Source of the DNA: Hypanus sabinus
Taxonomy: Eukaryota
Direction: 5' to 3'
Length of the DNA stretch: 64,000 nt
Assembly: GCF_030144855.1 (NCBI RefSeq)
Contig: NC_082726.1
Coordinates: 35,960,001 to 36,024,000, forward strand
The stretch's first letter is position 1; every line of letters begins with the position of its first letter. The translations under genes and the position numbers were made by a program. The notes below the pieces were generated by a model. It worked only from the letters and a program-made list of their open reading frames with translations, made no database searches and was not told where the DNA came from. This document shows, in pieces, positions 5,491-64,000 of the stretch.

Positions 5491-5995
5491 ATGTCAGGAT
5501 ATTTGGCCTATAATTTTCTGTTTTATTTTTAGAGCCTTTCTTCAACAGCAGAACAACATCAGCTATCCTTCAGTCCTCTGGTACCTCACCTGTCATTAAG
5601 GATGATTTAAATACCTCTGCTAGGGCCCCAGTAATTTCTGCACTTGCCTCCCACAGGATATGAGGGAATACCTTGTCAGGCCCTGGGGATTTATCTCCCT
5701 AATTTGTTTCAAATCAGCGAACACCTCCTCTGTAATCTGTGTAGGGTCCATGAAGTTGATGATGTTTTCCCTCACTTCTATAGACTATATGTCCATCTCC
5801 TGAGTAAATATAGATGCAAAAAATCAATTTAATATCTCTCCCATATCTTTTGGCTCCATTCATGGATTACCATTCTGATCTTCCAAAGGACCAATTTTGT
5901 TCCTTGCAATCCTTTTGCTCTTAATATACCTGTATAATCCCTTAGGGTTCTCCTTCACTTTGTCTGCTAGGGCAACACTATGCCTTCTTTTAGTT

Positions 5996-6125
5996 CAAAC
6001 AACACACACAAAATGCTGGTGGAACACAGCAGGCCAGGCAGCATCTATAAGGAGAAGCACTGTCGACATTTCGGGCTGAGACCCTTCGTCAATTTCCAGC
6101 ATCTGCAGATTTCCTTATGTTTGTT
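5996..6125. mobile_element. 130-bp Penelope-terminus-derived insertion with internal inversion and 13-bp TSD
   Basis: TSD CCTTCTTTTAGTT at 5983-5995 and 6126-6138; sequence matches PLE termini at 62751-62855 and 32720-32860. Confidence 0.8.
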
Positions 6126-7969: not shown

Positions 7970-9789
7970 GTGAGTGCTGTCCCCGGTGTAACGGGCCGAA
8001 GGGATTTCTTCAGCAAAGCACCAGCTGGCTGATGAGGTGCTGAGCTTTTGAGGGTATTAGATATTCATTGTGCTGTTGCCAAGAGACTGTCAGTGGAGTC
8101 GGAACCGTCGAATAGTCCGCGATCGTTAGTATTCTTGCATCGGGTTCTCTGCCTGATCTTCCCCAGTGACCGGTAATCACTAGTGGATGGGGGGTTGGAC
8201 TTGGGCTGCAGTTTGTTGTCGGGAGCGTTATTCTGTGTACGTATGTTCCCAGCAGATAAAAGGCCTGTTGCTTTTATATATACTGTATATAGATCCTCAC
8301 CATGCTTTACTGTTTAATCACCCCGGAGGGGAATTTGTTGGAATTGTGTAATGAGACTCCGAAGGCTCTCCAAACGGGTGAGAGTTGCTGGAATTTTAAA
8401 AAAAGTCTCCACAAAATGGGCCGGAGGTGGCTTAGGTCGAGAACGGAGGCTGCCCTTCAGAACGGAACAGGACATGGAGTCTCCGATCTGTTGCTGGTGA
8501 GAATGCCCTCCTCTCCACCACCACGAGCACCACGCCGCTCCTCTCCGCCTCACAGTGTAGTACACGGATCCCAACCCCTCCCAAGGGATGTCCTCTTACA
8601 GTCCGTCACCTCCCCGGGGGATACTCCATCCCTGACACAGCTCCGTGTCCTTCTCGATTGTTCCACGCAATCACTTTGCCACCACGACACTGATTGCATC
8701 TTGTCCTGTCTCCATTTTACTGCCTCAGACCGAACTTGAGCCACATTCATTCGATGGACATTCCCGTCCGTGCCATTCCATACCCTGACTGACAACGGTG
8801 CATTCGATTTTACACGGATTTCTGTAGATCCATCTTAGACTGAAAATATTCCACTGACCCACATAGCAACCTGACACACCTGATTTACACTCACCCTCAA
8901 ACCTTACTGATGTCTCAAGCACACACATATCGTTACACACGTTGTTGTACAAGACACCTATACCCCAAAGAAATGCCAAACTGACATAGATCTTACTGAG
9001 ACTCATATTATACTAACATATAACACTGACAACATCATGGACATACACTACATCAGACCAGCTCAACCACCATGGCACAGCAATAATAAATACACTGCCC
9101 TGATATACAGAAGGGTGAAGGGTCCATGGACCATGGTACTTTTGCCAATTTGCTCACCTTCACAGGCTGGAAGAACCTCCAGCAACAAACAATCTGCTGG
9201 AGGAACTCAGCCAGTCAAGCAGCATCTGTGGGAGGAAAACAGTTGTCCACCTTTCAGATCAAATTAGGACTAAGAGTGGAGAATGGTGATTATCAGTATA
9301 TAGAGGAAAAGGAAAGTGATGGAACAGGAGCCAGAGGTGATTGGTGGATGGAGGAGGAGGGGGTGGAATTGCTGGTGAAGGAATGTCCTATGTCCCCTAT
9401 CTCAGCCCTCCCCTTCTCCTCCTTATATTGGCTACCACCCTTCTCCACTCTCCGTCTTGATGCAAGGTCCCAACACAAAATGTGGACAATTCCATTCTTC
9501 TTACTGATTTCCTCTAACAGACCAGCATCTGCAGTCTCTCTGGATGAATCTCCGTCCTGTTGGACAAGGTTTGAGCTCCTGTAACAGATTTTGCCTTTTT
9601 CACATTCACAATTTGTGTACCTCTCAACTGAGCAATTTTCCTGTACCTCACTAAAAGGATGTGACTAGCTCCTGGAATAAAGTTTCCAGGTAACTCTCCT
9701 TCTCCCTAATCTCCAGATCTAGCTCACCAACTCTGAACGGAAGTTCGTCACGTGGTGCACATGGTGGGGTGGCTGTCATCAATCCCACG

Positions 9790-12560: not shown

Positions 12561-12750
12561 AAAAGATCCCACATAAATCTAAGATATAAAATGCTGGAAA
12601 CAACCACAAACTGTGGCAGCATCTATAGATTAAGAAATAGACTTAATTTTCAGATTGCTGATTGTTCATCTGAATTTATAACAAGAGGGATAACATAATT
12701 TACTATTTCTCTCTTTATTGTTTCTCATCATTACAGAGTGCCCATTCGAC

Positions 12751-19273: not shown

Positions 19274-21706
19274 CATGTTAGTTTTATCAGATGCTTAGTA
19301 ATGACAAAGTCTTAGTTAGTCATTGATGATAATGGTTTATGTGTTGTCTGTTTTAAAGGAAGTTGCTATCAATAAAAACATTAAAAGTGTGGAGTAATGT
19401 ATTGGTATTATGGTCTGGCATTGAGTCAGTTATTTTCCACAGATGAACAGTAGGAACATACTGTGATAATGATATCAAGAATGAACATAATAGAAAAGGA
19501 CTGGAGACACAAGACACTGGGTTCTGAAGCAAAAAACAATCTGCTGGAGCGACATTTCAGGAAGCAATCCTGAGTTTGTCCCAATTCAGGGTTCTGACCT
19601 GAAAAACTGACAATTCCTTTCCCCACACAGATGCTTCTTGACCCACTGAGTTCTATCAGAAGATTGTTTATCACTGTAAGAAAGGGCTGGGTGGTTCATT
19701 AAAGCTCACACAGAAACTTTGATTAACACCTATACCTAACATTTCCACCACCCTACATATGAACTTGCTCAATTGCTGACACTGCAGAGAATTTTCACTG
19801 GGTTAATTTCTGGGTTAAAGAGGGTTGAAAATGTGGAGAGGTTATGCAGGTGGGGCCTGGAGTTCAGGAGAATGAGAGGTGATTCTTACTGAAATATACA
19901 AGATTCAGAGAGGTGCTGAAAGGGTAGATGCTGAGATGTTACTTCCCTTAGTGGGTTTTTCTAAATCTGGGGAAAATAGTTTCAGCTTTAGAGAGCACCA
20001 ATTTAAGAGAAATAGTGAAGAGGAATTTCTTCTCTTTGAGGATTATTGCACTTTGGAATTCTCTACGCCAGAGATCTGTCATCAGATATACATTATGTAG
20101 AAACTGACAGAGATTTGCATGATAAGGCAGCTGTGGGGATAGGGAGGAAGCAGGAAAGAGTAGTTTTGAACCAGAACTGGATCAGCCATATTGAATAGTA
20201 GAATACCTTCAAAGGGTTGATAAGACTGCTTGTTTCTTTTGTTTTTTTGTAATATTGCACTTCAAAGTAAATAAAAGTAAGATGTGTTAAATGCACTTTT
20301 GTCATAAATATCTCCTGCTCTGCATTAATTCAGACTATTTTTGCTTCTAACTTCCTCTCTTTTTTAACTGCATCTTAGAAAATGGCTTATCTCAAACTGC
20401 AGTAAAGTTACCTCTGTTATTATACATTAAGTGACCAATTAATGCCTCCAGAAGTGTTGGTATGTATTTCCTATTTCTAATATTATCAGCATTTAGGTTT
20501 ATTTGTTGATGGCTTAGCAAAGATATGAGGAAACCAGAAAGTAACCCTGCAGGAGGCATTTGATAATATATGTAGATAAATATTAAGAGGGAGAATGGAA
20601 ATTAATAGATTCATAGCATCTACCTTCAGGGATTAAAATAATTAAGAAAATAAGAACATAAGGACTGAGTGAGAGAGTAGGCCATCTTGCTGTTCAAGCC
20701 TTCTCTGGCATTCATCTTGACCACTACTGATTTTTTTCAAACTCAGATTAATTTTCTGGCACCTTCCCCATTTTCTTTGATTCTCTTAATGTCCAGAAAT
20801 CCACCTTTTGCTATTGAAGGTGAAAACTTCAAAGGCTCAAAATTCAATGATTGAGCATCTAAGCTCTCATTAAGTGAAAAAAAATCTTTATCTCAGTTCT
20901 GAAGGGCCTATCCACTATTTTGAAATTGATCTCTGGTTCTAGATTCCTCAGCTGGGAATTTTGCAAGAGATTTCACAAGTTTCCATAAGCTCACTTTTCA
21001 TTCTTCCATACTCCAGAGAATGTAGGCCTAGTTTATTCAGTCTTACTTCATATGTCAAAGCATCTATTGAAGAAATATGACTAGTGAATCACTCTTCACT
21101 ATGGCAAATATATACTTATTGGAGAGGAGAACAAAACTCTTATGCAATACTCCAGGTATGGTCTTATCAAAGCCCTTTGTAATTGTAATGACACTTCTAT
21201 TTCTTTACTCAGATCCTTTCATAGTGGAGGCCAACATATCATTTGTTTTCCTAATCGTGGCATACACGATAGCTCTCGGTAATTTCTGTTCGGGAACACC
21301 TAGTTCTCTTTGAACATCAACATTATTCAGTCTGTCAACAATTTTAAAATAGTCTGCTTTCCCACTCTGTAAGTAGATAAAGGAAATTTCAGTATCTACC
21401 GAAATTCTTCTGTTTTAGTAACTGTTCAGTTGGATTAAGCATAAATATCACTATTTATAAAAGGAATGTAAAGCATGAAGTTATTATTCACATAACAGTT
21501 TTGTGGACAGAATTGAACTGACTGAACATTTGGATGTAGTACAGTGAAACTGCTTGAAGGCTGTAACAAAAAGCATTCAACAGAGATGCAGCAGAATGTG
21601 ATCACACAGGGTGTGCTGTTCAATGGACACATCCAGATATGCCCTTTAATAGCCATAACAGTGCATGCTCTTCAATGAGCGTAGAGGATGAACCTTTAAA
21701 CATTTC

Positions 21707-31231: not shown

Positions 31232-31494
31232 AAATTGTAATTGCCACTTTGTAACAACTTAAACAAACCATCCATTTTCTCACGTGCTAGAACTTTTGGT
31301 ACCATGAACAAATTTCTTAATTTCACCTCTTACACTTAAAGGTATTTCTGTGTACCATAAAGCAAGGTGTCTAGTACTGAACCTTGTGCCGCTCCACCAC
31401 ACTTAGAAAAATTCCCATCAACTTTAGAAATTGCTTTCTGACACTGAGACAATCTTAAAACAAACTGCCACTTTGCTCATATCATGGGCTTTTA

Positions 31495-32860
31495 TCCAAC
31501 TTCCACCCGGCCTTCAAATTTACTTGGTCCATTTCTGACACCTCCGTCCCCTTTCTTGGTCTCTCTGTCTCCATCTCTGGAGACGGTCTATCTACTGAAA
31601 TCTTTTATAAACCCACTTATTCTCACAGCTATCTCGATGATACCTCTTCCCACTCTGTCACTTATAAAAATGCTATCTCTTTCTCTCAGTTCCTCTGTCT
31701 CCACCACATCGGCTCTCAAGATGAGGCTTTTCATTCCAGAACTAATGAGATGTCTTCCTTCTTCAAAGAAAGGGGTTTCCCTTCCTCTAACATCAATGCT
31801 GCCCTCACCTGCATCTCCTCCATTTCATGCACGTCTGCTCTCACTCCATCCTTCCACCGCCACACCAGGGATAGGATTCCTCTTGTCCTCACCTCCCACC
31901 CTATGCATCCAGCACATAATTCTCTGTAACTTCCACAATCTGCAATGGGATCCCACCATCAAGCACATCTTCCCCCCTCCCACTTTCCACAGAGATCACT
32001 CCCTATGCAACTCCCTTGTCCAGTCGTCCCTCCCCACTGATCTCCCTCCTGGGACTTATCCTTGCAAGTGGAACAAGTGCCACACCTGCTTCTACACCTC
32101 TTCCTTCACTACTATTCAGGGCCCCAAACAGTCCTTCCAGGTGAGGCAACACTTCTCCTGAGAGTCTGTTGAGGTCATCTACTGTATCCAGTGCTGCCAA
32201 TATATAGACCCGACGTAGATTGGGAGACTGCTTCGCTGAACACCTATGCTCTGTCCACCAGAAAAACTGGGATCTCCGTGTAGCCACCCATTTCAATTCC
32301 ACTTCCCATTCCTATTCCAATATGTCAGTCCATGGCCTCCTCTACTGCAGTGATGAGGCCACACTCAAGTTGGAGGAGGAATACCTTATATTCCGTCTGG
32401 GTAGCCTCCAACCTGTTGGCATGACCATTGATTTTTTGAACTTCCAGTAATTGCCCACCTCCCCCTTCACCATTCCCCATTCCTGTTTGCTTCTCTCACC
32501 TTCTCTCCATACCTGCCCATCACCTCCCTCTGGTACTCCTTCCCCTTCCATCTTCCATGGTCTTCCGTCTACGATCAGATTCCCCTGCCTCCAGCCCTTT
32601 ACTTCTTTCACCTATCAACTTCCCAGCTCTTTGCTTCAGCCTCTTCTCTCTCCCAGTTTCACCTACCACCGTGTGCTTCTTCCTCCCCACCTTTTTACTC
32701 TGACTTCTCCCCTTCATTTCCAGTCCTGATAAAGGGTCTCCCCCTGAAACAACAAATATTTACTCTTTTCCATAGATGCTGCCTGGCCTGCTGAGTTCCT
32801 CCGGCATTTTGTGAGAGTTGCTTTGGGTTTTCAGCACCTGAAGATTTTCTCTTGTTTGTT
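31495..32860 (+). mobile_element. Penelope-like element (RT end, GIY-YIG region, terminal repeat), 11-bp TSD
   Basis: TSD ATGGGCTTTTA at 31484-31494 and 32861-32871; remnants GTYPC...CHTC, FAEHL, VATHFN, LKLEE..LIFRLGSLQP.GM. Confidence 0.85.
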
Positions 32861-36838: not shown

Positions 36839-39112
36839 GATCATAACATGATAAGTTTTTATCTACAATTTGAGAGGGATAAGGGCAGATAAGAGGTGTC
36901 AGTGTTGCAATTAAATAAAGGAGACTACGAAGCCATGAGGGAAGAGCTGGCCAAAGTTAAATGGGCGGATACCCTGGCAGGAAAGACAGTGGAACAGCAG
37001 TGGCAGATATTCTTGGGGATAATACAAAAGATGCAAAAGCAGTTCATTCCAATGAGAAGGAAGGATTCAAAGAGGGGGAAGGGGCCACAGTGGTTGACAA
37101 AGGAAGTCAGAGATTGCATAGCATTAAAGAAAAAGAAGTATGACAGGGCTAAGATGAGTGGGAATACAGATGATTGGGAAAGTTTTAAGGAACAGCAGAT
37201 CTTAACTAAAAAAGCAATACGGAGAGAAAATCAGGTTTGAGCCCAGTCTAGCCAGGAATATAAAAGGGGATAGCAAAAGCTTTTTTAGCTATGTAAAGAG
37301 AAAGAAGATAGTTAAGAACAATGTTGGCCCCTTGAAGAATGAATTGGGAGAAATTGTTACGGGAAACAGGGAAATGGCAACAGAATTTAATGTGTACTTT
37401 AGATCTGTCTTCACCAGGGAGGACACAAGCAATCTCCCAGATGTATGGATGGGCCAGGGTCATAAGATATCAGAGGAATTGAAACAGATTGACATTAGGA
37501 AAGAAACTGTGATGAGTAGACTGATAGGACTGAAGGCTAATAAATCCCCGGGTCCAGATGGTCTGCATCCGAGGGTTCTAAAAGAGGTGGCTCAGGAAAT
37601 TGCGGATGCATTGGTAATCATTTTCCAATGTTCCTTAGATTCAGGATCAGTTCCTGAAGATTGGAGAGTGGCTAATGTTATCCCACTTTTCAAGAAGGGA
37701 GGGAAGGAGAAAACGGAGAACTATCGCCCTGTTAGCCTAACGTCAGTCGTGGGAAAGATGCTTGAGTCCATTATTAAGGACGAAATAGTGGCATATTTTG
37801 ATGGCAGTAATAGGATTAGGCCGAGCCAGCATGGATTTACCAAGGGCAAATCATGCTTGACTAATCTGTTGGAGTTTTTTGAGGGTGTAACAAGGATGTT
37901 AGACGAGGGTAAGCCAGTGGATGTTGTGTACCTAGATTTTCAGAAGGCATTCGATAAGGTGCCACATAGGAGATTGGTGAGTAAAATCAGAGCTCATGGC
38001 ATTGGGGGCAGGGTTTCAACATGGATAGAAAACTGGTTGGCAGATAGAAAGCAAAGGGTAGCAGTGAATGGGTGTTTCTCGGACTGGCTGGAGGTGACTA
38101 GTGGGGTACCACAGGGCTCTGTATTGGGACCACAGCTCTTTACGATTTATGTCAACGATTTAGATGAGTGCATTGAAAACTATATCAGCAAGTTTGCTGA
38201 TGATACTAAACTGGGTGGCAGTGTGACATGCGAAGAGGACGTTAGGAGAATACAGGGAGACTTGGATAGGCTGGGTGAGTGGGCAGATACTTGGCAGATG
38301 TCATTCAATGTGAATAAATGTGAAGTTATCCACTTTGGAAGCAGGAACAAGAGGGCAGAGTATTGTCTGAACGGTGTCGAGTTAGGTAAGGGAGAAATGC
38401 AAAGAGACCTAGGAGTCCTAGTTCATCAGTCAATGAAGGTGAATGAGCAAGTGCAACAGGCAGTGAAGAGGGCAAATGGAATGTTAGCCTTTATTACAAG
38501 GGGAATTGAGTACAAGAGCAAGGATGTCCTTTTGCATTTGTACAGGGCCCTGGTGAGACCACACCTGGAATATTGTGTACAGTTTTGGTCTCCAGGTTTA
38601 AGGAAGGACATTCTGGCAATTGAGGAAGTGCAGCGTAGATTCACTAGGTTGATTCCTGGGATGGCAGGGCTGTCTTATGCAGAGAGATTGGAGAGATTGG
38701 GCTTGTACACACTGGAATTGAGGAGATTGAGAGGGGATCTGATTGAAACATTTAAGATAATTAAAGGATTTGATAGGATTGAGGCAGGAAATATGTTCCA
38801 GATGTTGGGAGATTCCAGTACCAGAGGCATGGATTGAGAATAAGAGGTCAGTTATTTAAAACTGAGGAAAAACTTCTTCTCCCAGAGAGTTGTGGGGGTC
38901 TGGAATGCACTGCCTCGGAAGACGGTGGAGGCCAACTTTCTGGATGCTTTCAAGAAGGAGCTAGATAGATATCTGATGGATAGGGGAATCAAGGGATATG
39001 GGGACAAGGCAGGGACTGGGTATTGATAGTGAATGATCAGCCATGATCTCAGAATGGCGGTGCAGACTCGAGGGGCCGAATGGTCTACTTCTGCACCTAT
39101 TGTCTATTGTCT
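36839..39112 (+). mobile_element. Young 5'-truncated CR1 LINE with nearly intact RT
   Basis: 501-aa ORF 37332-38837 with YLDFQKAFDKV, GVPQGSVLGP and KFADD; frameshifts near 37230 and 38829; (ctattgt)n tail; AAAGT at both ends (36834-36838, 39113-39117). Confidence 0.95.
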
Positions 39113-40015: not shown

Positions 40016-40492
40016 CAAAAATATTTTGCAGAGATCGTTTCTGTCTAAAATGAGCCCTGAGTCCAAGGGAACCCTTTTTGTATTATCTGTATGTCCACAG
40101 TCTTTGATTACCATCTGGGCAATGTAATAAGTCCTCTTCTTATTTGTAGGTAGTTCCTCAGGAACAAGGGTAACTCCAGCTCTGCACACTCTGGGATGGT
40201 TGATATTAATGTGGGATCCACAAATTCTGCTCTATATAGACAGGGTAGGAAGTGATTGATAGGGTGGGCAGATGGGCAGCTTGGGAGTTGGTGAATTTTA
40301 TCTGCTTTTATGCTGAATTACTGTGTGCTCCCAACAAATGGACACAAGGCTCTCAACAGAATATTAAATTCTTCTTGTTATTCTGAGCAGTCAGAGGCCA
40401 GAATACCCACACCTGTGGGTATGTTGTGTATCTGCAGGAAAGCACTGAGCTATTCCCTTTCCTCTGTCCCTTTCTGCGACCAAACTCAGAAC

Positions 40493-42240
40493 CACCCCCC
40501 CCCCCCACCTGGTTCAATCCCTTTCTACCTACATCCATGACACCTCACACGCTCTGGATCTTTTCAATGATTTCAGGTTCCTCGGCCCCCATTATCTTAT
40601 TTTTACTACAGATGTCCAGACCCTCTAGACCTCCATTCCCCACCAGGAAGGCCTCAAAGCTCCACTTTTTTCTGGACACAAGACCTAACCAGTACCCCTC
40701 CACCACCACTCTCCTCTGCCTAGCAGAAAAAAATAATTTCTTCTTTGGCTCCTCCCACTTCCTTCAAACAAAAGGTGTAGTCATGGGCACTCACATGGGC
40801 CACAGCTATGTGGAACAGTCTATGTGCCAAGTCTACACTGGTGACAGTCCCACACTTTTCCTTAGCTACATCGACAGCTACATTGGTGCTGTTTCCTGCA
40901 CCCATGGTGGACACATCGACTTCATCAACTTCACCTCCAACTTTCACCCTGCCCTCAAATTTACCTGGTCTACTTCCAACACCTCCCTCCCTTTTCTCGA
41001 TCTCATTGTCTCTATCTTTGGAGACAGCCTATCCACTGATGTCTGTTATAAACCCATGGATTCTCACAGCTGGACTATACCTCTTCCCACCATGTTACTT
41101 GTAAAAGCGCCATCCCCTTCTCTCAATTCTTTTGCCTCTGTTCTCAGAATGAGGCTTTTCATTCCAGAGCTAAGGAGATGTCCTCCTTCTTCAAAGAAAG
41201 GGGCTTCCCTTCCTCCACCATCAACGCTGCCCTCAACCACATCTCTTCCATTTCACACACATTTGCTCTCACTCCAGTCTCCCACCACTCTATCAGGGAT
41301 AGGGCTCCTCTTATCCTCTCCTACTACCACACTAGCCTCTGCATCCAGCACATAATTCTCCGAAACTTCTGACATTTCCAACAGGAACCCACCTCCAAGC
41401 ACATCTTCCTCCACCCCCCCCCCTCCACTTTCTGTTTTCTGCAGGGATCACACCCCAAGTGACTCCCTTGTCCATTTGTCCCTCCCCACTGATCTCCCTG
41501 CTGGCATTTATCCTTGCAAGTGGAACAAGTGCTACACCTGCCCCTACACCTCCTCCCTCACTACCATTCAGGATATTAAACACTTCACCTGAGAGTCTGT
41601 TGGGGTCATATACTGTGTCCAACGTTCCCAGTGTGGCCTCCTGTATATCAGTGAGACCCAACATAGGTTAGAAGACTGCTTCGCTGAGCACCTGCACTCC
41701 ATCTATCTGAAAAAGCAGCATCTCCCAATGGTCGCCCATTTTAATTCCACTTCCATTCTCAGTCCCATGTCGATCCATGGCCTTCTCCATTGTCGTGATG
41801 AGACCACACTCAGGTTGGAGGAGCAGCATCTTATATTCTGTCTGGGTAGCATCCAAACTGATGCACGAACATTTGATTTCTCTAACTTCCAGTAATGCAC
41901 CCTACCCCACTCTCCCTCACCACTTCCCATCTCCTCTTCCCTCTCTCACCTTATCCCCTTGCCTGCCCATCGCCTCCCTCTGGTGCTCCTCTCCTTTCTC
42001 TTTCTTCAACTACCTTCCGTCTCTTTTACCAATTTACTTCCCAGCTCTTTACTTCATCCCCTCCCCCTTCAGGTTTCACCTATCACCTCATTTTTCCTCT
42101 CTCCCCTCCCCCCACCTTTTAAATCTATTCCTCTTTTTTTTTACAATCCTGCCGAAGGGTTTTGGCCCAAAATGTGAACTGTACTCTTTCCCTGGATGCT
42201 GCCTGGCCTGCTGAGTTCCTCCAGCATTTTGTGTGTGTTG
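40493..42240 (+). mobile_element. Penelope-like element, degenerate RT and GIY-YIG
   Basis: FLQTKGVVMGT..YIDS..FHPALKFT..LPFLDL PLE-type RT motifs; possible TSD CTCAGAAC (40485-40492, 42241-42248). Confidence 0.85.
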
Positions 42241-42485
42241 CTCAGAACAGGGTGCCTGTTTCTGGAGAGTGGTGTTTGATAAGCCAAAAACATGGCCTGA
42301 TCAATGAAAGGGACTAAATGTAACTAGGGCATCACTGTTGGGTTTGTTGGCCTAAGAGACGGAGAGTTTGCTTATTCTGCCATTGTATTCAGAAGGTTTT
42401 GCAGAGACTGTTGGTAAGTATCGCTTCAGTGCTCTAAAGTACCTGTTAGAGATAGTCAGAGGTGCATAGGCGGCTGTGGATTATG

Positions 42486-48415: not shown

Positions 48416-49520
48416 ACAATGCAGAGTTCAAGATAGCAACTGGATTTCCTAGCTATGTTTATTCCCTAGGAGAAACCCTTCCTCCTAAAGGCCAACCATG
48501 TCTGAAAATAAAAATCAAAATATTGCAAATGCTGGCAATCACACTCAACAGCCATGCAGATTCTTAAGGAAGACAAGTAAAGTTAATATTTTATGTCAAA
48601 CATCCTTCATCAAATCTTTGGTCATGATCTTTAACCTGAAGTATTAAGTCTGTTTCCTTTCCATCGATGCTGCCTGATCTGTTGAGTGTTTCCAGCATTT
48701 TCTGTCCTTATGCTTGAAAATAACTTACTTCAACAAAGGCTTTTAAAGGTATTTCAAAGCAAACATATACTGTAATATCCAAAAGGATACTTAAACTTTA
48801 GCCAATTAAAGAAAATTAACAAAATTATGTATTGTAATAGCATCAAGAAATAATCCAACAACTAATGCCTTAACTGTTTATTACCCCTGTAAGTATCAGA
48901 CAAGTGGAGGAGGGAAATCCTTTATTCCATTGAATGTCATGTTCAACTTTGTGTGGACAGGACACGATGAGCCCAAATTCCAAATTCACAGCAGTGGTAT
49001 CAAATTAGCATTTCACATTGTGACTCCTGCCGTTACCTTCACCCATCTTACCCACCAGTCTGGATGCAGAAGGCTGATATTTCTAGTCATCTGCACCCTC
49101 AGGTCAGACAATGCTGTTGCAGTGCTGACTAGGCAGCATGCAGTGGATGATCTGTTGCTCTAGGGGTAACCAACCACACACTTCAACCATAAGAGAGATT
49201 GCCAGTACAGGCACTGGTTGAGGCTTGCTGTGGACCTACACAAAGCCTCACCACATAACAAGGAGTTCCAAGGAATAGCACAAGCTCAATTACCAAAATT
49301 CCTTATGGACAGTTTTTTCAAAGAATCCTATATAGTGAAGAAGACAAAATAAAATAAACATAATCAACTAGTTACTTATTCCTGAAACATACACCTTATT
49401 TGAAAGTCCTCAAAATATTAGAATTAGAAATGAATTCTAATGACACAATACAGTCATTTAAGAAAGTAACTGTCTTTTTTTTATCTCTCAGAGGACAAGC
49501 ATTCCCTACTCTTTAACTAA

Positions 49521-49750
49521 GACACAAAAGTACTGGAGCAGCTCAGCAAGTCAGTCAGCATGTATGGTGGGGAATAAACAGATGATGTAGACCTTTCATC
49601 AGGATGCCGAGACTCCTAGTCCTGATGAAGGCCTCAGGCCAAAATATCACCTGTTTATTACCCTCCATGCATGCTGCCTGACTTGCTAAGTTCCTCCAGC
49701 ATTTTGTGTGTGTTGCTCAAGATTCCTAGCACCTGCAGAATCTCGTGTTT
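49521..49750. mobile_element. Fold-back element of two head-to-head PLE termini, each with a CTGATGA core
   Basis: TCATCAG at 49596-49602 and CTGATGA at 49622-49628; arms reverse-complementary over about 60 nt with mismatches. Confidence 0.8.
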
Positions 49751-50326: not shown

Positions 50327-51286
50327 TCAGAATCAAAATCAGAATCAGGTTTATTATCACCGGCATGTGTCATGGAATTTGTTAACTTAGCAGCAGCAGT
50401 TCAATGCAATACATAATATAGAAGCAGCAGAAAAAATCAATCAATTACGGTATACGTATATTGAACAGATTTTAAAATTTGTGCAAAAACAGAAACAATG
50501 AAAGTGTTCATGGGTTCAATGTCCATTTAGGAATCAGATAGCAGAGGGGAATTTACTATGTGTGTGTGCCTTCAGGCCTCTGTACCTCCTACCTGACGGT
50601 GACAGTAAGAAAAGGGCATGCCTTGGCTTCTGGAGGTCCTTAATAATAAACTCTGCCTTTCTGAGATACCGCTCCTTGAAGGTGTCCTGGGTACTTTGTA
50701 GGCTAGTACCCAAGATGGAGAAAACTAAATTGACAACCAAACTAAACTGGCAGCTCCTTTCGGTCCTGAGTAGTAGCAACCCCCCCCCCCCACCCCCGCT
50801 CCACCATACCAAACAGTGATGCAGCTGTCAGAATGCTCTCCACGGTACATCTATATAAGCTTTTGAGTGTTTTTGTTGACATACCAAGTCTATTCAAACT
50901 CCTGATGAAGTATATTCACTGTCTTACCTTCTTTATAGCTGCATCAATATGATGGGACTGGGTTAGGTCCTCAGAGATCTTGACATCCAGGAACTTGAAC
51001 CTGCTCACTCTCTCCACTACTGAACTCTCTATGAGGATTGGTATGTGTTCCTTTGACTTACCCTTCCTGAAGTCCACAATCAGCTCTTTCGTCTTACTGA
51101 CATTGAATGCAAGGTTGTTGCAGCGACATCACTCCACTAGTTGGCATATCTCACTCCTGTAAGCTCTCTCGTCACCATCTGAGATTCTACCAACAATGGT
51201 TGTATCATCAGCAAATTTATAGATGGTATTTGAGCTATGCCTAGCCACACAGTCATGGGTATAGAGAGAATAGAGCAGTGGGCTAA
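50327..51286 (-). mobile_element. Rex1/Babar-type LINE RT and 3' end
   Basis: LSPLLYSLYTHDCVARHSSNTIYKFADDTT; (agaatc)n tail. Confidence 0.85.
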
Positions 51287-54200
51287 GATGAGGAGGCAGA
51301 TGAGAGGGTGGAGGAAAGGGAGGAGAGGAAGAAATACAAGGCAATAGGTGATAGGTGAAACTGGGAGGGGGAGGGGGTGAAGAAAAGACCTGTGAAATCG
51401 ATTGGTGAAAGAGGTAAAGGGCTGGAGAAGGGGGAATCTGACAGGAAAGGACAAAAGGCCATGGGAAGAAAGGGATGGGAGAGGAGCACCAGAGGAGGTG
51501 ATGGGCAGGTTAGGAGATAAGGTGAGAGAAGGAAATGGGGATGGAGAGAGGGGATGCAATTACCGGAAGCTCGCGATATTAATGTCCATGCCATCAGTTT
51601 GGAGACTACCCAAACAGAATATAAGGTGTTGGGCCTCCAACATAGTGGAGGATTACAAATACCTGAGGATACAAATGGACAATAAACTGAACTGGTCAAA
51701 GAACACTGGGGCTGTCTACATGAAGGGTCAGAGCCGTCTCTACTTCCTGAGGAGACTGAGGTCCTTTAACATCTGCCGGACGCTGCTGAGGATGTTCTAC
51801 ATGGCTGTGGTGGCCAGTGCTATCATGTTGCTGTTGTGTGCTGGGGCAGCAGGCTGAGGGTTGCAGACACCAACAGAATCAACAAACTCATTCATAAGGC
51901 CAGTGATGTTGTGGGGGTGGAAATGGACTCTCTGACGGTGGTGTCTGAAAAGAGGATGCTGTCCAAGTCGCATGCCATCTTGGACAATGTCTCCCATCCA
52001 CTCCATAAAGTACTGGTTAGGCACAGGAGTACATTCAGCCAGAGGCTCATTCCACCAAGATGTAACACTGAGCGTCATAGGAGGTCATTCCTACCTGTGG
52101 CCATCAAACTTTACAACTCCTCCCTCGGAGTGTCAGACACCCTGAGCCAATAGGCTGGTCCTGGACTTATTTCCACGGCATGATTAACTTATTATTATTT
52201 AATTATTTATGGTTTTATATTGCTATATTTCTTCGCTATTCTTGGTTGGTGCGGCTGTAATGAAACCCAATTTCCCTCGGGATCAATAAAGTATGTCTGT
52301 CTCTCAACCTGAATGTGGCCTCATCATGGCAGTAGAAGAGGCCACAGGTAGACATATAAGAATGGGAAGTAGAAAGCAGGAGATCCAGCTTTTTCTGGCG
52401 GATGGAGCGTATGTACTCAGCAAAGCAGTCTGGAGGCTGGTGGGGTGGTAGACAAGGACAAGAGGAACCCTGTTTGTGGTGGCATGGTGGGAGAATGGAG
52501 TGAGGGCCGACGTATGCAAAGTGTTAGAAATGGGGGTGAGGGCACCATTGATGGTGGAGGAAGGGAAGTCCCTTTTGTTGAAGAAGGACATCTCCTTAGT
52601 TCTGGAATGACAAGCCTCATCCTGAGAGCAGATGGAGCAGAGATGGAGGAATTCAGAGAAGGGGATGGCATTCTTACAATTAACAAGGTGTGAGAGTAAG
52701 TGAGCTTTATAAAAGATATCAGTAGTTAAGCTGTCTCCAGAAATAGAAACAAAGAGATTGAGAAGGGGGAGGGAGGTGTCAGAAATGGAGCAGATAAATT
52801 TGAGGACAGGGTGGAAGTTGGAGGCAAAGTGGATGAAGTCGATGAGCTCTGTACAGGTGCAAGAAGCAGCACCAATGCAGCTGTCAATGTAACGTAGGAA
52901 AAGTTGGGGAGTGATACTAGTGTAGGCTTGGAACGTGGCCGACAAACAGGCACAGCTTGCATCCATGCGAGTGCCTATGGCTTCACCTTTTGTTTGAAGG
53001 AAATGGGAGGAGCCAAAGGAGAAATTATTGAGAGTGCAGACCAGTTCCACCGGATGGAGGAGAGTGGTGGTGGAGGGGAACAGGTTGGGTCTGGTGTCCA
53101 GAAACAGGAAGCTTTGAGGCCTTCCTGACGGGGGATGGAGGTGTACAAGGACTGGATATCCATTGTGAAAATGCGATCAGGGCCAGGGAATCATTGAAAA
53201 GATCAAGAACATGTGTAGTGTCACAGATGTAGGCAGGAAGAGACTGAATTGGGATATAAAACTGAGTTGAGTATGCAGATATAAGTTTGGTGGGGCAAGA
53301 ATAATGAGAAACAATGAGTCTACCTGGACAGGCAGGTTTGAGGTTCTTGGGTAGAAGACAGAAATGGGAGATGCAGGGTAAAGGAACTATGAGGTTGGTG
53401 TCAGTGGATAGGAGATCCCCGGAGGTAATAAGGTTAGTGATGGTGTGAGAGACAGTAGCCTATTGTTCCTTAGTGGGGTCCTGTTCAAGGGGTAAATAAG
53501 TGTCTGAGAGATGTTGCTTGGCCTCAGCAGAGGTCAGTCCGCCAGACTACTACAGTACTCCCCTTATCTGCTGGTTCGATGGTGAGGTTAAGATTAGTGT
53601 GGAGAGAGTGGAAAGCAGTATGTTTGGAAGGAGAGAGGTTGGAATCGGAGAGAAGAGTGGCGAAGTTGAGATGGTGGATGTTGTGACAGCAGTTAGCAAT
53701 GAAAAGATCTAAAGCAGGCAGAAGACCAGAGCGGGGTGCCAGAAAGAGGAGAAGGGGTTATCAGTGCGAGCTGGAGAGTCCTTAACAAAGAAGTAGACAC
53801 AGAGTTGGAGGCAGAAGAAGAGCTCAGCGTTGGGGTGGGCACGGAACTAACTGAGGTGTGGGTGCAGGGGGGGATGATGGTGAAATCCTACTGAGGACAG
53901 AATGTTCTGCCTCAGAGAGGGGAAGGTCAGAGGGGATGGTGAAGACCCAGCATGGCTGAGAGCTGGGATCAGAGGGGAGAAGGGAGTTGGTAGTGTCTGA
54001 GGAGAGGGGAAGATTGGGTGTTCAGGGAGGGTGAGGTGAGAGGAAGATAGAGTCTCTGAGTACCCAAGAGCTGGCGGTGGGACCTGAGAGACTTGGGGTT
54101 GGAGTGGTGGTAGGGGAAGGGGAGACTGGGGCTCCAGTGGCAGCGTGTGAAGACCCAGCCTGGAGGTGGAGTTGGGCTTGAAGGGTTGCACAACAGGCCC

Positions 54201-54700: not shown

Positions 54701-55129
54701 TGAAATATTCTTATGTGATCAGGTGCCCAATCTTGACCTGAAACTTCAACTATCCCTCTGCCTCCACAGATGCTGCCTGACCCCCTGAGTACATCCAGCA
54801 TTTTTTTTTTTACTTATGAAAGATTTGCCTGAGCCATTGACTATTTCCAGAACTTCGTTTTTCTTCCAAAATTCCTAGCTTCTGCACCTTTTAAAAAAAA
54901 TTGTATTGTGCCTTTCAAGTGTCTCTTGATTTACAGGACTACAAGCCAGAAAATTCAACTATTGTCCAGGTCCTTCTGTAGGCATGTGTGTACAGAGCAA
55001 CTCAAATGCAATACAATAACGTGTATTAAAATTAAATAAAATAGACGTCTATGACCCTTGTAGTTGTAAACTTCCTGAATAAATGAGTAAATGACTACAG
55101 AATTCTGACAATGAGATCATAGCCTCACC

Positions 55130-57810: not shown

Positions 57811-59612
57811 GATGCACAGTTGAGAACATTTAAATATCTTGTGATATCTGATTGGAATGTTTATTTTGCAGAGGGAGATGATATGGGAAGGGGTTTTAGG
57901 ATTGTTGGTGGTGGGAAGAAAGTTGTAGATGTTTAGCTGGATTTGGTTTCTTTTTGGCAGTATTTTGTATGTGTCAATATAATTAAAGGAAAAAAGTTCT
58001 TGAGGATGAGTGAGGGGAAAAAAGTGAAGTTGTACAAAGTTCCGTTTTTATAAGAGCTTGAAGTATCTGCAGAGAGTAAAATAGAGTTGATACTTAAGCT
58101 GTATAGCTCAGTGTCAAGGACACAGGGATAACTTTAGTATTCTGTCAACATGTAGCTAGCGGATTTTAACTTGTGTTAGCAACAAAGGATTTTTTTGACA
58201 CTGACATGTATTTAATAATGAAAATGTGCTAATTTATTCCGAAGTAATTTCACAGTGCAGCTGATAAACATACCTTGGTACTCATTTCTGTTCATTAATG
58301 TTTTGGTACAATAATGGTTATAGACTTTGTGTAGATAAAAACAACCTGAGTTCATTTTATGGAGCATTGTTCAGTATAAAACAGAAAATGCTGGGTCTAC
58401 TCAGTAGATCACATAATGTCTATGCAAAGAAATCTGAGTTAACATTTCAGACTGTTCTTTTGTGGGATCGAGAGAAAGTTAGGAATAGAACAGGTTTCAA
58501 GCTGCTGCCTGTCCTTGATTGTTTTATATTTTAATTTCAGTTTTCCAGCATCTGTATATTTTCACTTTTGGATTGTCTATAAGCAATTCTAGAAGAATTT
58601 CTTATTGGCCAGTCAGACTATTTTATAAATCCTGAGGAGTCTTTTTAATTACTCTGGGGAGGCTTGCAGCATTTAACTGTACACTATCCTGTGGCTTCAA
58701 GATAAATTTAGAGGCTGTTTAGTCCCACTATGCCCAAATGTAATTACTCTTGTGTCTTTGGCTTTTATTGTTAGCATTGATAATTTTCGTAGCAGCTCAG
58801 TTAGAAACAGAATGCTTTGTTGATTTGTCAGACTGGTAACATCCAGGTAAGATGGACAGTTAACGCTAATGCAAACTGGAGTTCAAAAGATCACACCCCA
58901 ACTAAAAATACAAAGCCTTCGTGGCAGATGCTATCCCATTGAAGTTTTAAAACTCAACAGTAAAAAAAAACCTAAATTTATTAGCTCATCATTTGTATCT
59001 GAAAAGAGGTGTTTGCCAAAATCATGATTGTCTTTAAGAAAGACAAATCTAGCTGGAGGAACTGCAGAGGACTTTCCCTACCCTCTGCTGTGGAGAAAAA
59101 TCGATGACAGAGTTTTCATCAAGTTTGTCCTCACAGTGCTTGTGGTGGCCGGTGAAATCCAATGCCTGTGACCTATACCTTTAGGAGAGATGATAGAAAC
59201 AGCTTCAACTACAATATGTGGTCTCTTTTGGTTGTTTTCCAGGTATAGACCACCCCTGTATTGGCTCTAAACTTAATTTTAGCCAATATTGCATCTTATT
59301 TTGTAGAAGATCCAATTAGCATTCATGCTAAATGCATCTTTTGGTGCACTAAAATAGGCGCAATCCAATTGCATTTGAAAATAAGTCATGTTGATCAAGA
59401 AACAAGTATGAGGATCTCTACTCATGCAAAGTGGAAATTCTCAAAGTAGTATGTGTATCCTCCAACTGGATTGTTTCTTTTCCTGAAGAAGGTCTGATAT
59501 CATCAACTTCTGGTGTGAGTGTGGGGAAAAAAGAATGAGTTTTGGTGGGCTGAGGAGGGGGTAAAAGGTGAAATGTTGCTGGAACTTACTTTTGCTATCT
59601 TACTGTTTTCAG

Positions 59613-61304: not shown

Positions 61305-62065
61305 TATTCACTACTCTCTGGCTAAAAAAAATTACTCTTTACCTCTGTTCTAAAAGGTCTTCCCTCAATTTTGAGGCTGTGTCCTCGTGTCCTCTAGTTC
61401 TGGATACCCCCAGCATAGGAAACATCCTCTCCACGTCCACTCTATGTAGTCCTTTCAACATTCGGTATGTTTCAATGAGACTCTTTCCCCCCCCCCCCCC
61501 CCCCCCCGCATTCTTCTGAATTCTAGTGAGTACTGGTCCAAAACTGCCAAACGCTCCTCATATCTTAACCCCTTCATTTCCAGAATCATCCTCATGTACC
61601 TCCTCTGGACTGTGTCCAATTACAACACATCGTTTGAGATATGGGGCCCAAACTGTTGACAGTACTCCAAATGTGGCCTGACTAGTGTCTTATAAAGCCA
61701 CAGCATTATCTCCTTGCTTTTATATTCTATTCCACTTAAAATAAATGTGAAAGTTGCATTTGCCGCCTTCACCACAGACTCGGCCTTCTGGGAGTCTTGC
61801 ATGAGGACTCCCAACTCCCTCTGATGTTTGAATTTTCTTCCCATTTAAATAGTCCGCACTATTATTCCTTTTACCAAAAAGCATTATCATACATTTCCCA
61901 ACACTATTCCATCTGCCACTTTTTTCCCCGTTCTTCTAAATAGTCCAAGTCTTGCTGCAATCACATTGCTTCCTCAGCACTACCTACACCACCACCTATA
62001 TTCATATCATCCACAAACTTTGCTACAAAACCATCAATTCCATTATCTAAATCAATGACAAACAA
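61305..62065 (-). mobile_element. CR1 LINE fragment with a poly-C run
   Basis: ORF 61620-61844 LYKTLVRPHLEYC. Confidence 0.85.
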
Positions 62066-62750
62066 ATTCTTTCTTCTTTTTCCACAGACATTGTTCAAAA
62101 CACTACCTGCTAGGCTTGCATTTCACAGAATTACATATCCCTATGTCAGTTTTTCCCCCTCTCTCTTTGTTAATCTCTAAACAGCTCCAAAAATACTGAA
62201 ACATTTTTATCTCAGCAATCCTGACTCCTGATATTCCTTTTGTCCTTTCCATTCCTCCACATGCTCAGCAACTTGTTTTCACTTTCTTCCTCTGTTGGGG
62301 ATTTCAATGTGAATCTTTAACTTTCTTTTTCCACAGCGACCATCTCAAACTTGATAATCATTTCTAGCATTTTCAATTTTCAGTTTGTTTCCTTTTCCCT
62401 CTGTATAGCCTAGATTTTTAGAGGTCAAAGTGTAGATAACAGTTTTGACTCTGTAATTCTCTACATTTTAGAATGCCCCTACAGATTAAAAAATTATAAG
62501 TTCTTCAGTACACAAATGTAAAGTGCAACAAAATGATTGTTACTCCAGATTTGATGTTTTATTAAAAAATACAGTAAACACAAAAAAACAAAAACAATGA
62601 ATATAAAAGCAACCTTATACAACATAATGTATAAGCAAATGTTATATACATAGACTGATATGTACAGAAAGTGACACGAGGGGATGTATATATAATGGCA
62701 TTGGGGTGGATTAATGAGTAATGGTGTTGATAACCCAGACAATTTAGGAG

Positions 62751-64000
62751 AACACGAGGAAATCTGCAGATGCTGGAAATTCAGGCAACACACTCAAAAT
62801 GCTGGTGGAATGCATCTATAGGGAGAAGTGCTGTCGACGTTTCTGGCTGAGCCCCTTCGTCTAACTGAAAGGAAAGGTAGTAAGAGATTTGGAAGTAGGA
62901 GGGGGAGGGGAAACGCGAAACGATAGGAGAAGACCGGAGGGGGTGGGGTGAAGCTGAGAGCCAGACAAGTGATTGGCAAAACGGATACAGAGCTAGAGAA
63001 GGGAAAGGATCATGGGATGGGAGGCCTAGGGAGAAAGAAAGGGGGAGGGGAGCACCAGAGGGAGATGGAGAACAGGCAGAGTGATGGGCACCTACCACCC
63101 CACCAGCCTCCGGATCCAACGTATAATTCTCCGTAACTTCTGCCACCTCCAACGGGATCCCTCTACCAAGCACATCTTTCCCTCCCCTCCCCCTTCTGCT
63201 TTTCACAGGGATCACTCCCTACGCGACTCCCTTGTCCATTCATCCCCCCTCCCCCCCATCCCTTCCCACCGATCTCCCTCTTGGCACTTATCCTTGTAAG
63301 CAGAACAGGTGCTACACCTGCCCTTACACTTCCTCCCTCACCACCATTCAGGGCCCCAGACAGTCCTTCCAGGTGAGGCGACACTTCACTTGTGAGTCGG
63401 CTGGTGTGGTATACTACATCCGGTGCTCCCAGTGTGGCCTTTTATATATTGGTGAGACTGGGAGACCGTTTCGCTGAACACCTACGCTCTGTCCTCCAGA
63501 AAAAGCAGGATCTCCCTGTGGCCACACATTTTAATTCCACGTCCCATTCCCATTCTGATATGTCTATCCATGGCCTCCTCTACTGTCAAGATGAAGCCAC
63601 ACTCAAGTTGGAGGAACAACACCTTATATACCGGCTGGGTAGCCTCCAACCTGATGGCATGAACATTGACTTCTCTAACTTCTGTTAATGCCCCTCCCCT
63701 TCTTACCTCATCCTTGATATATTTAGTTTTTTCTCTCTCTGCCCATCACTCTCCCTGTTCTCCATCTCCCTCTAGTGCTCCCCTCCCCCTTTCTTTCTCC
63801 CTTGATCCTTTCCCTTCTCTAGCTCTGTATCCCTTTTGCCAATCACCTGTCTGGCTCTCAGCTTCACCCTACCCCCTCCTGTCTTCTATCATTTTGCATT
63901 TTCCCTTCCCCCTTCCTACTTTCATATCTCTTACTATCTTTCCTTTCGGTTAGTCCTGACGAAGGGTCTCGGCCCAAAGCATCGACAGCACTTCTCCGTA
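62751..64000 (+). mobile_element. Penelope-like element with an inverted 5' pseudo-LTR; runs off the window
   Basis: GIY-YIG VVYYIRCSQCGLLYIGET, RFAEHL, PVATHFN; 62820-63090 is the reverse complement of 63740-64000. Confidence 0.9.
63952..63988 (+). ncRNA. Minimal type-I hammerhead ribozyme motif (decayed copy) in the PLE terminus
   Basis: GTC-CTGACGA-AGGGTCTCGGCCC-AAAGC-ATC-GAC; GAAAC is mutated here but intact in the inverted arm (62830-62855, minus strand), and GAAA is intact at 6060-6092 (minus strand). Confidence 0.6.

What the first reader, a model, noticed from the sequence alone, without database searches (positions are those of the whole stretch)
63952..63988. Penelope-like terminal repeat carries a minimal type-I hammerhead ribozyme, reconstructable from six copies in the window
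Seen: copies at 63952-63988 (+), 62830-62858 (-), 6058-6092 (-), 32721-32755 (+), 42145-42182 (+) and 49618-49655 (+) give the consensus (CA)GTC CTGA(C/T)GA A GGGTCTCGGCCC GAAAC GTC GAC(TG/AG). This folds as stem I (GTC/GAC), the CUGANGA core, stem II (GGG..CCC), GAAA, a loopless palindromic stem III (ACGT) and a GUC cleavage triplet. Established: PLE pseudo-LTRs in many animals carry minimal hammerheads of this kind, thought to cleave as dimers. Inference: this chondrichthyan family used one to process its RNA. Every copy here has at least one core lesion, often at a CpG, so activity is claimed for the family consensus only.
Basis: partly seen in the sequence, partly recalled or inferred. Interest (0 to 1): 0.75.

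Follow-up and report, generated by a model that had tools for sequence, protein, structure and literature searches.

The report
Dead Penelope-element ends with hammerhead relics
The flagged spot is a decayed copy of the small self-cutting "hammerhead" RNA motif that Penelope-like jumping genes are already known to carry near their ends; it is real but ordinary, and every copy in this window is broken.

Summary
All six places carry the motif at the stated coordinates, each with 1-3 lesions in the catalytic core. The window holds about 15 copies or fragments from about 11 insertions.

- **Penelope-like element (PLE):** four copies lie 240-270 nt downstream of decayed ORF remnants. These are 50-87% identical to elasmobranch proteins, one of which carries both reverse transcriptase and GIY-YIG endonuclease.
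- **Hammerhead test:** the corrected motif passes a strict minimal-hammerhead descriptor. No extant copy does, and neither did 400 simulated windows.
- **Negatives:** Rfam finds no hammerhead. There is no stem covariation beyond shuffles, as expected for neutral decay.

This is the known dimer-type PLE hammerhead (PMC4209133, PMC11167929) in an elasmobranch family. Cleavage is inferred, not shown. No outside DNA or reads could be obtained. The scan has noted this family many times on other DNA of this genome.

The parts
63952..63988 (+). Focal hammerhead relic: helix I 5' strand, CTGACGA box, bulged A and helix II intact; G12>A, A15.1>G, 16.2 G>A
63066..63703 (+). 5'-truncated, frame-shifted PLE ORF remnant (linker plus GIY-YIG part) upstream of the focal motif; up to 87% identical to a Hypanus sabinus protein
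63704..63951 (+). CT-rich untranslated stretch between the ORF end and the hammerhead
62753..63090 (-). Head-to-head inverted partner of the focal copy (arms 84-97% complementary). Its hammerhead relic at 62831-62861 keeps GAAAC GTC GAC and has lost C3/U4
5996..6125 (-). Complete short insertion flanked by a 13-bp target-site duplication (5983-5995 and 6126-6138). It holds the hammerhead relic 6059-6092 starting at U4, preceded by about 34 nt of the element's own 3' tip in inverted orientation (6092-6125)
31471..32456 (+). Decayed PLE ORF remnant (RT end, CxxC linker, GIY-YIG C-terminus)
32704..32857 (+). 3' terminal region of that copy. Hammerhead relic at 32722-32756 (G8>A, U16.1>A); the element ends about 100 nt after the cut-site position
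40449..41904 (+). Decayed PLE ORF remnant (RT motifs through GIY-YIG)
42128..42258 (+). 3' terminal region of that copy. Hammerhead relic at 42145-42182 (A6>C, G12>A, C17>G)
49522..49748 (.). Fold-back of two head-to-head termini. The plus arm carries relic 49618-49654 (only core lesion G12>A). The minus arm 49522-49608 has an intact CTGATGA box and a deletion of helix II 3' strand and GAAA
12115..12312 (.). Fold-back pair: minus arm 12115-12193, plus arm 12184-12312. Both hammerhead relics are heavily damaged or deleted
9157..9500 (.). Head-to-head pair: minus arm 9157-9259, plus arm 9444-9500. Both arms share C17>G
19577..19666 (+). Old diverged copy (about 64% identical to the window majority) with a recognisable helix I, helix II and GAAA; the 5' box is decayed
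48633..48704 (+). Old fragment holding only the 3' half of the motif plus the tail
54729..54804 (+). Fragment with the 3' half of the motif plus the tail, head-to-head with the minus-strand ORF remnant below
51315..53739 (-). Fourth PLE ORF remnant (53739-51563) with part of its 3' untranslated stretch (51441-51315). Its hammerhead and tail are missing, and a LINE-type sequence abuts at about 51300
58381..58454 (-). Old fragment with the 3' half of the motif plus the tail

Best explanation
The motif is the relic of the minimal, loopless-helix-III type I hammerhead that sits in the terminal region of an endonuclease-encoding Penelope-like retrotransposon family of an elasmobranch genome. In this family it lies about 250 nt after the RT/GIY-YIG ORF and about 75-105 nt before the 3' insertion boundary.

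Because the element inserts by target-primed reverse transcription with frequent 5' truncation, and often with an inverted second arm, almost every insertion carries the motif. After insertion it decays neutrally, fastest at its five CpGs.

**Shown:** the repeat family, its PLE coding context, the motif anatomy, the CpG decay, and the absence of an intact copy in this window.

**Inferred from published work on other PLEs:** in the active source element the RNA formed a double hammerhead. Two motifs would supply helix III (ACGU with ACGU) and helix I to each other, possibly helped by the element's own protein. The RNA would be cut after GUC, trimming read-through or tandem transcripts.
For: - **Family:** nhmmer finds about 15 copies or fragments.
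- **PLE context:** tblastn maps four PLE ORF remnants, with the motif 240-270 nt downstream in three. The homologue P0006 carries RVT_1 plus GIY-YIG, and window pieces align to it at 50-62% identity.
- **Core columns:** C3 8/10, U4 9/11, G5 9/11, A6 9/11, G8 8/10, A9 7/10, bulged A 10/10, G12 9/13, A13 13/13, A14 13/13, A15.1 12/14, U16.1 12/14, C17 8/14.
- **CpG decay:** a CG/TG/CA spectrum at all five CpGs.
- **Descriptor:** the corrected motif passes a strict descriptor that gave 0 hits in 51 Mb of simulated sequence.
- **Intact source:** the arms of the 62753-63090 / 63740-64000 pair carry non-overlapping lesions. By parsimony, their common source had an intact core at insertion.
- **Retro-insertion:** a 13-bp target-site duplication flanks the copy at 5996-6125.
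- **3' ends:** the two classes of 3' end about 30 nt apart parallel the optional 30-40 bp PLE 'tail' and the internal RT start described for Anolis Poseidon (PMC11167929).
- **Literature:** published features of PLE min-hammerheads match point by point (PMC4209133).
Against: - No Rfam hammerhead model matches any copy, even at E<=10 on stretches of 111-1301 nt.
- No copy in the window is intact.
- There is no compensatory change beyond shuffles: 69% of cells paired against 72% shuffled.
- Three positions of the functional motif rest on CpG correction, not on plain majority.
- The double-hammerhead fold scores -16.7 kcal/mol and is not the minimum-energy dimer, which is an extended duplex at -30.5. 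Nearest-neighbour energies do not score the hammerhead core, so this says little.
- Genomic copies extend about 100 nt past the cut site, so the RNA that was reverse-transcribed was not cut at its 3' motif.
- In Anolis Poseidon, cleavage needed the element's protein, was dispensable for insertion in vitro, and no RNA-seq ends mapped to the cut site (PMC11167929).
Confidence: 0.85

Rival explanations
1. The hammerhead-like sequence is kept by the element mainly as a structural or recognition signal near its 3' end. It might act as a binding site or folding roadblock for the element's RT during priming or template switching. Cleavage would be marginal or absent in this family.
For: - The motif lies within about 100 nt of the reverse-transcription start region, and every inserted copy includes it uncut.
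- The inner ends of several short arms fall within about 0-30 nt upstream of, or inside, the motif: at 6091, about 12190, about 49601-49608 and about 19570.
- In Anolis Poseidon, hammerhead mutants did not affect insertion, cleavage needed protein, and no RNA ends mapped to the cut site (PMC11167929).
- In vitro activity of metazoan min-hammerheads is low (PMC4209133).
Against: - The positions best kept are exactly the catalytic ones: A13, A14, A15.1, U16.1 and the CUGA box.
- PLEs of plants, fungi and protists carry fully active hammerheads at the same place (PMC4209133).
- The clustering of arm ends was judged by eye on few events.
Confidence: 0.08
2. The short hammerhead-bearing units, meaning fold-backs and 100-230-bp stubs, are a separate non-autonomous retrozyme-like family. 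On this reading they copy themselves as units, and are not by-products of PLE insertion.
For: - Several short units share the head-to-head layout: 12115-12312, 49522-49748, about 19540-19666, and 5996-6125 with its own 13-bp target-site duplication.
- A 2026 preprint derives animal retrozymes from PLE terminal repeats and reports them in one chondrichthyan genome (10.64898/2026.07.22.740005).
Against: - There is no head-to-tail tandem array in the window. The nearest same-strand neighbours, 48633 and 49601, are about 1 kb apart and of different age.
- The same inverted layout occurs with long, ORF-bearing arms: 62753-63090 against 63066-64000, and 54729-54804 against 53739-51315. This fits one insertion mechanism of the autonomous element.
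- Arm lengths and junctions differ from unit to unit.
Confidence: 0.05
3. The resemblance to a hammerhead is a coincidence within an ordinary repeat.
For: - No Rfam hit.
- No covariation.
- Part of the functional motif depends on CpG correction.
Against: - The descriptor gave 0 hits in 51 Mb of simulated sequence.
- The motif sits exactly where PLEs are known to carry hammerheads, and it shows the non-obligatory family traits: a bulged base, G10.1-C11.1 and a palindromic 15.2-16.2 (PMC4209133).
Confidence: 0.02

Closest known systems
Minimal hammerhead ribozymes (min-HHR) in the terminal repeats of metazoan Penelope-like elements (Cervera & de la Pena 2014, PMC4209133; Lunse et al. 2017 as cited in PMC6765202)
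   Same: - Type I topology.
- CUGANGA and GAAA boxes.
- An extra unpaired base between A9 and G10.1, and a G10.1-C11.1 closing pair.
- No helix III loop, with palindromic 15.2-16.2.
- A short helix I of 3-5 bp.
- Location next to an RT/GIY-YIG ORF, massive dispersal as single truncated copies, and pairs on opposite strands 100-700 bp apart.
   Different: - Helix II is short here: 4 bp plus a tetraloop, against the 6-8 bp reported for many metazoan families.
- The host lineage (elasmobranch) is not named in the papers I could read.
- All copies in this window are dead.
Poseidon PLE of Anolis carolinensis (PAc; PMC11167929)
   Same: - A hammerhead lies a short distance upstream of the internal reverse-transcription start sites.
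- An optional 30-40 bp 'tail' gives two classes of 3' ends. In this window the ends fall about 75 and about 100-105 nt after the cut-site position.
- Genomic copies include the uncut motif.
   Different: - In PAc the ORF start overlaps helix II. Here the ORF start could not be located, because no full-length copy is in the window.
- The protein-assisted cleavage shown for PAc is untested here.
Non-LTR retrozymes of animals (PMC7229834; preprint 10.64898/2026.07.22.740005)
   Same: Type I hammerheads with a weak helix III that need dimers. The preprint proposes that they derive from PLE terminal repeats.
   Different: Retrozymes are head-to-tail tandem arrays that give circular RNAs. The copies here are dispersed or inverted, not tandem, and several are attached to coding PLE remnants.

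Membership tests
PLE-type minimal type I hammerhead (PMC4209133) | CUGANGA box (C3-A9) | tested here: met
   Majority C 8/10, T 9/11, G 9/11, A 9/11, N, G 8/10, A 7/10. The box is intact in the copies at 63956-63962, 49622-49628 and the minus arm of the 49.5-kb fold-back.
PLE-type minimal type I hammerhead (PMC4209133) | GAAA box (G12-A15.1) | tested here: met
   G 9/13, A 13/13, A 13/13, A 12/14. The four G12>A cases are CpG>CpA.
PLE-type minimal type I hammerhead (PMC4209133) | Extra unpaired base between A9 and G10.1 | tested here: met
   A in 10 of 10 copies that cover the column.
PLE-type minimal type I hammerhead (PMC4209133) | Helix II closed by G10.1-C11.1 | tested here: inconclusive
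   Position 10.1 is G in 7/9. Position 11.1 is T in 7, C in 5 and A in 1. The 11.1/12 dinucleotide is TG 7, CA 4, CG 1. C follows only by CpG correction; with T the pair is a G-U wobble. Helix II cells are 82% paired.
PLE-type minimal type I hammerhead (PMC4209133) | No helix III loop; 15.2-16.2 palindromic, so two motifs can form helix III together | tested here: met
   There is no base between 15.2 and 16.2 in any copy. The dinucleotide is CG 1, TG 5, CA 3, TA 2 of 14, the spectrum expected from an ancestral CG. With A15.1 and U16.1 this gives ACGU.
PLE-type minimal type I hammerhead (PMC4209133) | U16.1-H17 cleavage site followed by the helix I 3' strand; helix I open (type I) | tested here: met
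   T 12/14 and C 8/14. Majority AGTC pairs with GACT for 4 bp, or 5 with a U-G. Only 59% of helix I cells are still paired.
PLE-type minimal type I hammerhead (PMC4209133) | Compensatory changes in the stems across copies or families | tested here: not met
   One cell has a change on both sides, and 452-488 of 500 shuffles do as well or better. This is uninformative for neutrally decaying copies of one family. Other families could not be fetched.
PLE-type minimal type I hammerhead (PMC4209133) | Self-cleavage after H17, as a dimer | not testable with these tools
   No experiment was possible.
Rfam hammerhead families (Hammerhead_1, Hammerhead_3, HH9, HH10, Hammerhead_II) | Match to a curated covariance model | tested here: not met
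   There were 0 matches at gathering score in the whole window. No hammerhead family appeared at E<=10 on 62700-64000, 49560-49700 or 6020-6130. This is expected for damaged copies without a helix III hairpin. The published motifs were found with an RNAmotif descriptor.
Penelope-like element, endonuclease-encoding | Single ORF with RT followed by a C-terminal GIY-YIG endonuclease | tested here: met
   Window ORF pieces align co-linearly to P0006, P0003 and P0011 over RT, linker and GIY-YIG. P0006 has Pfam GIY-YIG at 23.2 bits (cut-off 22.6) and RVT_1 at 22.7 bits, which is below the 29.6 cut-off. The window's own pieces give no Pfam hit.
Penelope-like element, endonuclease-encoding | Terminal repeat (pLTR) present at both ends of a full element | tested here: inconclusive
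   There is no full-length copy in the window, and all four coding copies are 5'-truncated. Only the 3' terminal region is seen, often with an inverted partner.
Penelope-like element, endonuclease-encoding | Optional 30-40 bp 'tail' giving alternative 3' ends (PMC11167929) | tested here: inconclusive
   The copies at 32857, 49748, 62753 and 12312 end about 25-34 nt later than those at 5996 and about 42246. The copy at 5996-6125 carries just that terminal piece inverted at its other end. There are few copies and the boundaries were read by eye.
Animal non-LTR retrozymes | Head-to-tail tandem repeats, each unit with a hammerhead | tested here: not met
   No same-strand neighbours are closer than about 1 kb. 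Neighbouring copies are inverted.

The most novel reading that the evidence does not exclude
The folded hammerhead region, not its cleavage, may act as the point where the Penelope RT stops or switches template, and so may generate the abundant head-to-head fold-back insertions.

- In this window the inner ends of several short arms lie at or just upstream of the motif.
- One TSD-flanked unit (5996-6125) joins the inverted about 34-nt terminal 'tail' directly to U4 of the motif.

If this is general, the motif would have a structural role in integration that has not been described.
Probability: 0.08. Interest if true: 0.5.

Novelty: new member of a known kind. Interest (0 to 1): 0.2.

Why it matters
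It matters little beyond annotation. The finding shows that an abundant elasmobranch Penelope-like family carries the same dimer-type minimal hammerhead already described for PLEs of fishes, amphibians, reptiles and invertebrates. It also shows that the family has the same layout of hammerhead, internal RT start and optional tail as the one PLE studied biochemically.

The thousands of such relics are worth masking as PLE termini, so that they are not repeatedly flagged as new ribozymes, retrozymes or microRNA-like hairpins. A genome this rich in copies of different ages could serve to test whether the hammerhead core is kept under selection in the active lineage.

Tried and rejected
- **Rfam:** the scans gave no hammerhead at gathering score on the whole window or at E<=10 on three stretches. 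The only hits were chance matches far below gathering score: lncRNA pieces, mir-577/mir-3913-like hairpins on the fold-back, and SNORD57.
- **Stem covariation:** nothing beyond shuffles on 11 copies.
- **Folding of the 38-nt CpG-corrected motif:** the monomer minimum-energy fold pairs core bases and the dimer minimum is an extended duplex. The double hammerhead is feasible at -16.7 kcal/mol but not favoured by nearest-neighbour rules. I judged this uninformative.
- **Outside sequence:**
  - Two exact-pattern scans of metagenome contigs found nothing.
  - A protein-profile scan of viral contigs found no relative.
  - As a result, no comparison with other genomes or families, no RNA ends and no expression data were obtained.
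- **PDB:** no relative of the PLE protein was found.
- **Non-PLE sequences set aside:**
  - The RT ORFs at 37332-38837 and 4859-5386 are LINE-type, not PLE.
  - A 17-nt partial match at 61646-61662 lies in an unrelated repeat with no 5' box.
- **Target-site duplications:** an exact-match search succeeded only for the copy at 5996-6125.
- **Limits I kept:** I built only a 38-nt majority of the non-coding motif.

Full report
**What is at the coordinates**

Reading the six places confirms the motif on the stated strands.

- **63952-63988 (+):** the 5' half is perfect (AGTC, CTGACGA, one extra A, GGGTCTCGGCCC). The 3' half reads AAAGC ATC GAC, which gives G12>A, A15.1>G and 16.2 G>A.
- **62831-62861 (-):** the mirror case. 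GAAAC GTC GAC is intact, and the CUGA box is broken by a 1-nt deletion and substitutions.
- **Other four copies:**
  - 6059-6092 (-) has C3 lost at a junction and 15.2 C>T.
  - 32722-32756 (+) has G8>A and U16.1>A.
  - 42145-42182 (+) has A6>C, G12>A and C17>G.
  - 49618-49654 (+) has G12>A plus a decayed helix III.
- No copy in the window passes a strict minimal-hammerhead descriptor.

**How many copies, and what they belong to**

A profile built from the six copies finds about 15 copies or fragments. Besides the six, these lie at:

- 9157-9259 (-) and 9444-9500 (+)
- 12115-12193 (-) and 12184-12312 (+)
- 19577-19666 (+)
- 48633-48704 (+)
- 49522-49608 (-)
- 54729-54804 (+)
- 58381-58454 (-)

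The copies are 64-90% identical to the window majority, so they are old.

The 309-aa ORF at 40426-41355 has 16 relatives. All the named ones come from elasmobranchs: Mobula hypostoma, Hypanus sabinus and Rhincodon typus. One of them, P0006, scores for Pfam GIY-YIG above its cut-off and for RVT_1 below its cut-off.

tblastn with these proteins maps four co-linear, frame-shifted ORF remnants:

- 31471-32456 (+)
- 40449-41904 (+)
- 53739-51563 (-)
- 63066-63703 (+)

In three of them the motif follows 240-270 nt after the ORF end. The fourth is cut off at about 51300, where a LINE-type sequence abuts it.

An RT followed by a GIY-YIG endonuclease in one ORF defines Penelope-like elements (PMC4209133). 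The two larger RT ORFs in the window, 37332-38837 and 4859-5386, are LINE-type and unrelated.

**The family motif**

The catalytic positions are the best-kept columns.

The plain majority, however, reads T at 11.1, T at 15.2 and A at the first base after the cut site. For example, the 11.1/12 dinucleotide is TG 7, CA 4, CG 1. This is the signature of CpG decay from an ancestral CG.

- CUGANGA box
- optional bulge
- helix II of at least 4 bp closed by G-C
- GAAA
- paired 15.2/16.2
- UH
- helix I of at least 3 bp

The same descriptor gave no hit in 400 simulated 64-kb windows, both strands.

The focal inverted pair adds an independent hint. Its two arms are 84-97% complementary and carry non-overlapping lesions. 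Their common source therefore most parsimoniously had an intact core when it inserted.

**What could not be shown**

- Rfam's hammerhead models do not match any copy. This is expected: the copies are damaged, and the published PLE motifs, which lack a helix III hairpin, were found with a descriptor and not with a covariance model.
- Pair counts on 11 copies show no covariation beyond shuffles. Copies of one family that decay neutrally cannot show it. The needed comparison is between families, and I could not fetch any outside DNA.
- Thermodynamic folding is uninformative.
- No expression or RNA-end data could be obtained.

**Mechanism**

The anatomy matches the published metazoan PLE min-hammerhead feature by feature.

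Helix III cannot form within one motif because there is no loop. Two motifs can pair ACGU with ACGU and exchange helix I strands to form the double hammerhead. The literature regards these motifs as dimer-dependent and weakly active in vitro (PMC4209133; PMC6765202).

The only biochemically studied PLE is Anolis Poseidon (PMC11167929):

- Cleavage needed the element's protein.
- Cleavage was not required for insertion in vitro.
- No RNA-seq ends mapped to the cut site.
- Reverse transcription started internally at two sites about 30-40 nt apart, a short distance downstream of the hammerhead.

The window's copies fit that layout. They extend about 75 or about 100-105 nt beyond the cut-site position, in two classes of 3' end. 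So the RNA that was copied had not been cut at its 3' motif.

I therefore take processing of read-through or tandem transcripts at the upstream motif as the most likely role. I mark it as inferred.

**Layout of insertions**

Most events are head-to-head pairs or fold-backs. This form is already described for PLEs: motif pairs on opposite strands 100-700 bp apart.

The unit at 5996-6125 has a perfect 13-bp target-site duplication. It consists of the inverted terminal about 34 nt of the element joined directly to a copy that starts at U4 of the motif and ends at the earlier 3' site.

**Verdict**

This is a correct spotting of a known kind of feature in an elasmobranch PLE family: a new member of a known kind, of low interest.

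The scan has already noted this family hundreds of times on other DNA of this genome, and earlier follow-ups reached the same reading. I treated those notes as leads only.

Noticed in passing
window 5983-6138: A complete 130-bp insertion with a perfect 13-bp target-site duplication (5983-5995 and 6126-6138). The last about 34 nt of the PLE terminus, in inverted orientation, are joined directly to a direct copy. That copy starts at U4 of the hammerhead and ends at the earlier of the two 3' end positions. It looks as if the optional PLE 'tail' was copied onto the other end of the insertion.
   Followed up: partly
window 32857, 49748, 62753, 12312 versus 5996, about 42246; also 54804, 48704, 58381: The copies have at least two, perhaps three, classes of 3' end. 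These lie about 25-34 nt apart, about 75 and about 100-105 nt after the cut-site position. This recalls the two internal RT start sites and the optional 30-40 bp tail of Anolis Poseidon (PMC11167929).
   Followed up: partly
window 6091, about 12190, 49601-49608, about 19570, about 48610: The inner (5') ends of the short arms of fold-back insertions lie at or within about 30 nt upstream of the hammerhead motif, not at its cut site. This was judged by eye on five events, with no statistics.
   Followed up: no
window 9157-9259 (-) and 9444-9500 (+): Both arms of this head-to-head pair share the transversion C17>G (GTG GAC). Their source therefore already carried a non-cleavable site, or both arms came from one template.
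   Followed up: no
window 32774-32857 and equivalent tails: After the motif, an ATG (in ATAGATGCTGCC) opens a frame that stays open to the element's 3' end. In Anolis Poseidon the ORF starts within the terminal repeat, so this may be the start of the PLE ORF. No full-length copy is in the window to test it.
   Followed up: no
window 12718-14571 (+): A 617-aa ORF with a strong Pfam GRIN_C match (E 8.7e-33). It is probably a coding exon of a GPRIN-family host gene.
   Followed up: no
window 37332-38837 (+), 4859-5386 (-), 51050-51300 (-): LINE-type reverse transcriptase remnants, closest to L1 ORF2p and R2 proteins in the PDB. The third abuts and truncates the 3' end of the minus-strand PLE copy.
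   Followed up: partly
window 49561-49671: The fold-back of two PLE termini draws weak microRNA-precursor matches in Rfam (mir-577 and mir-3913, 15-17 bits against a gathering score of 100). These are generic hairpin matches, not evidence of a microRNA.
   Followed up: yes
window 61600-61720: A different dispersed repeat contains a chance 15-of-17 match to the 3' half of the motif (61646-61662). It has no CUGANGA box upstream.
   Followed up: yes
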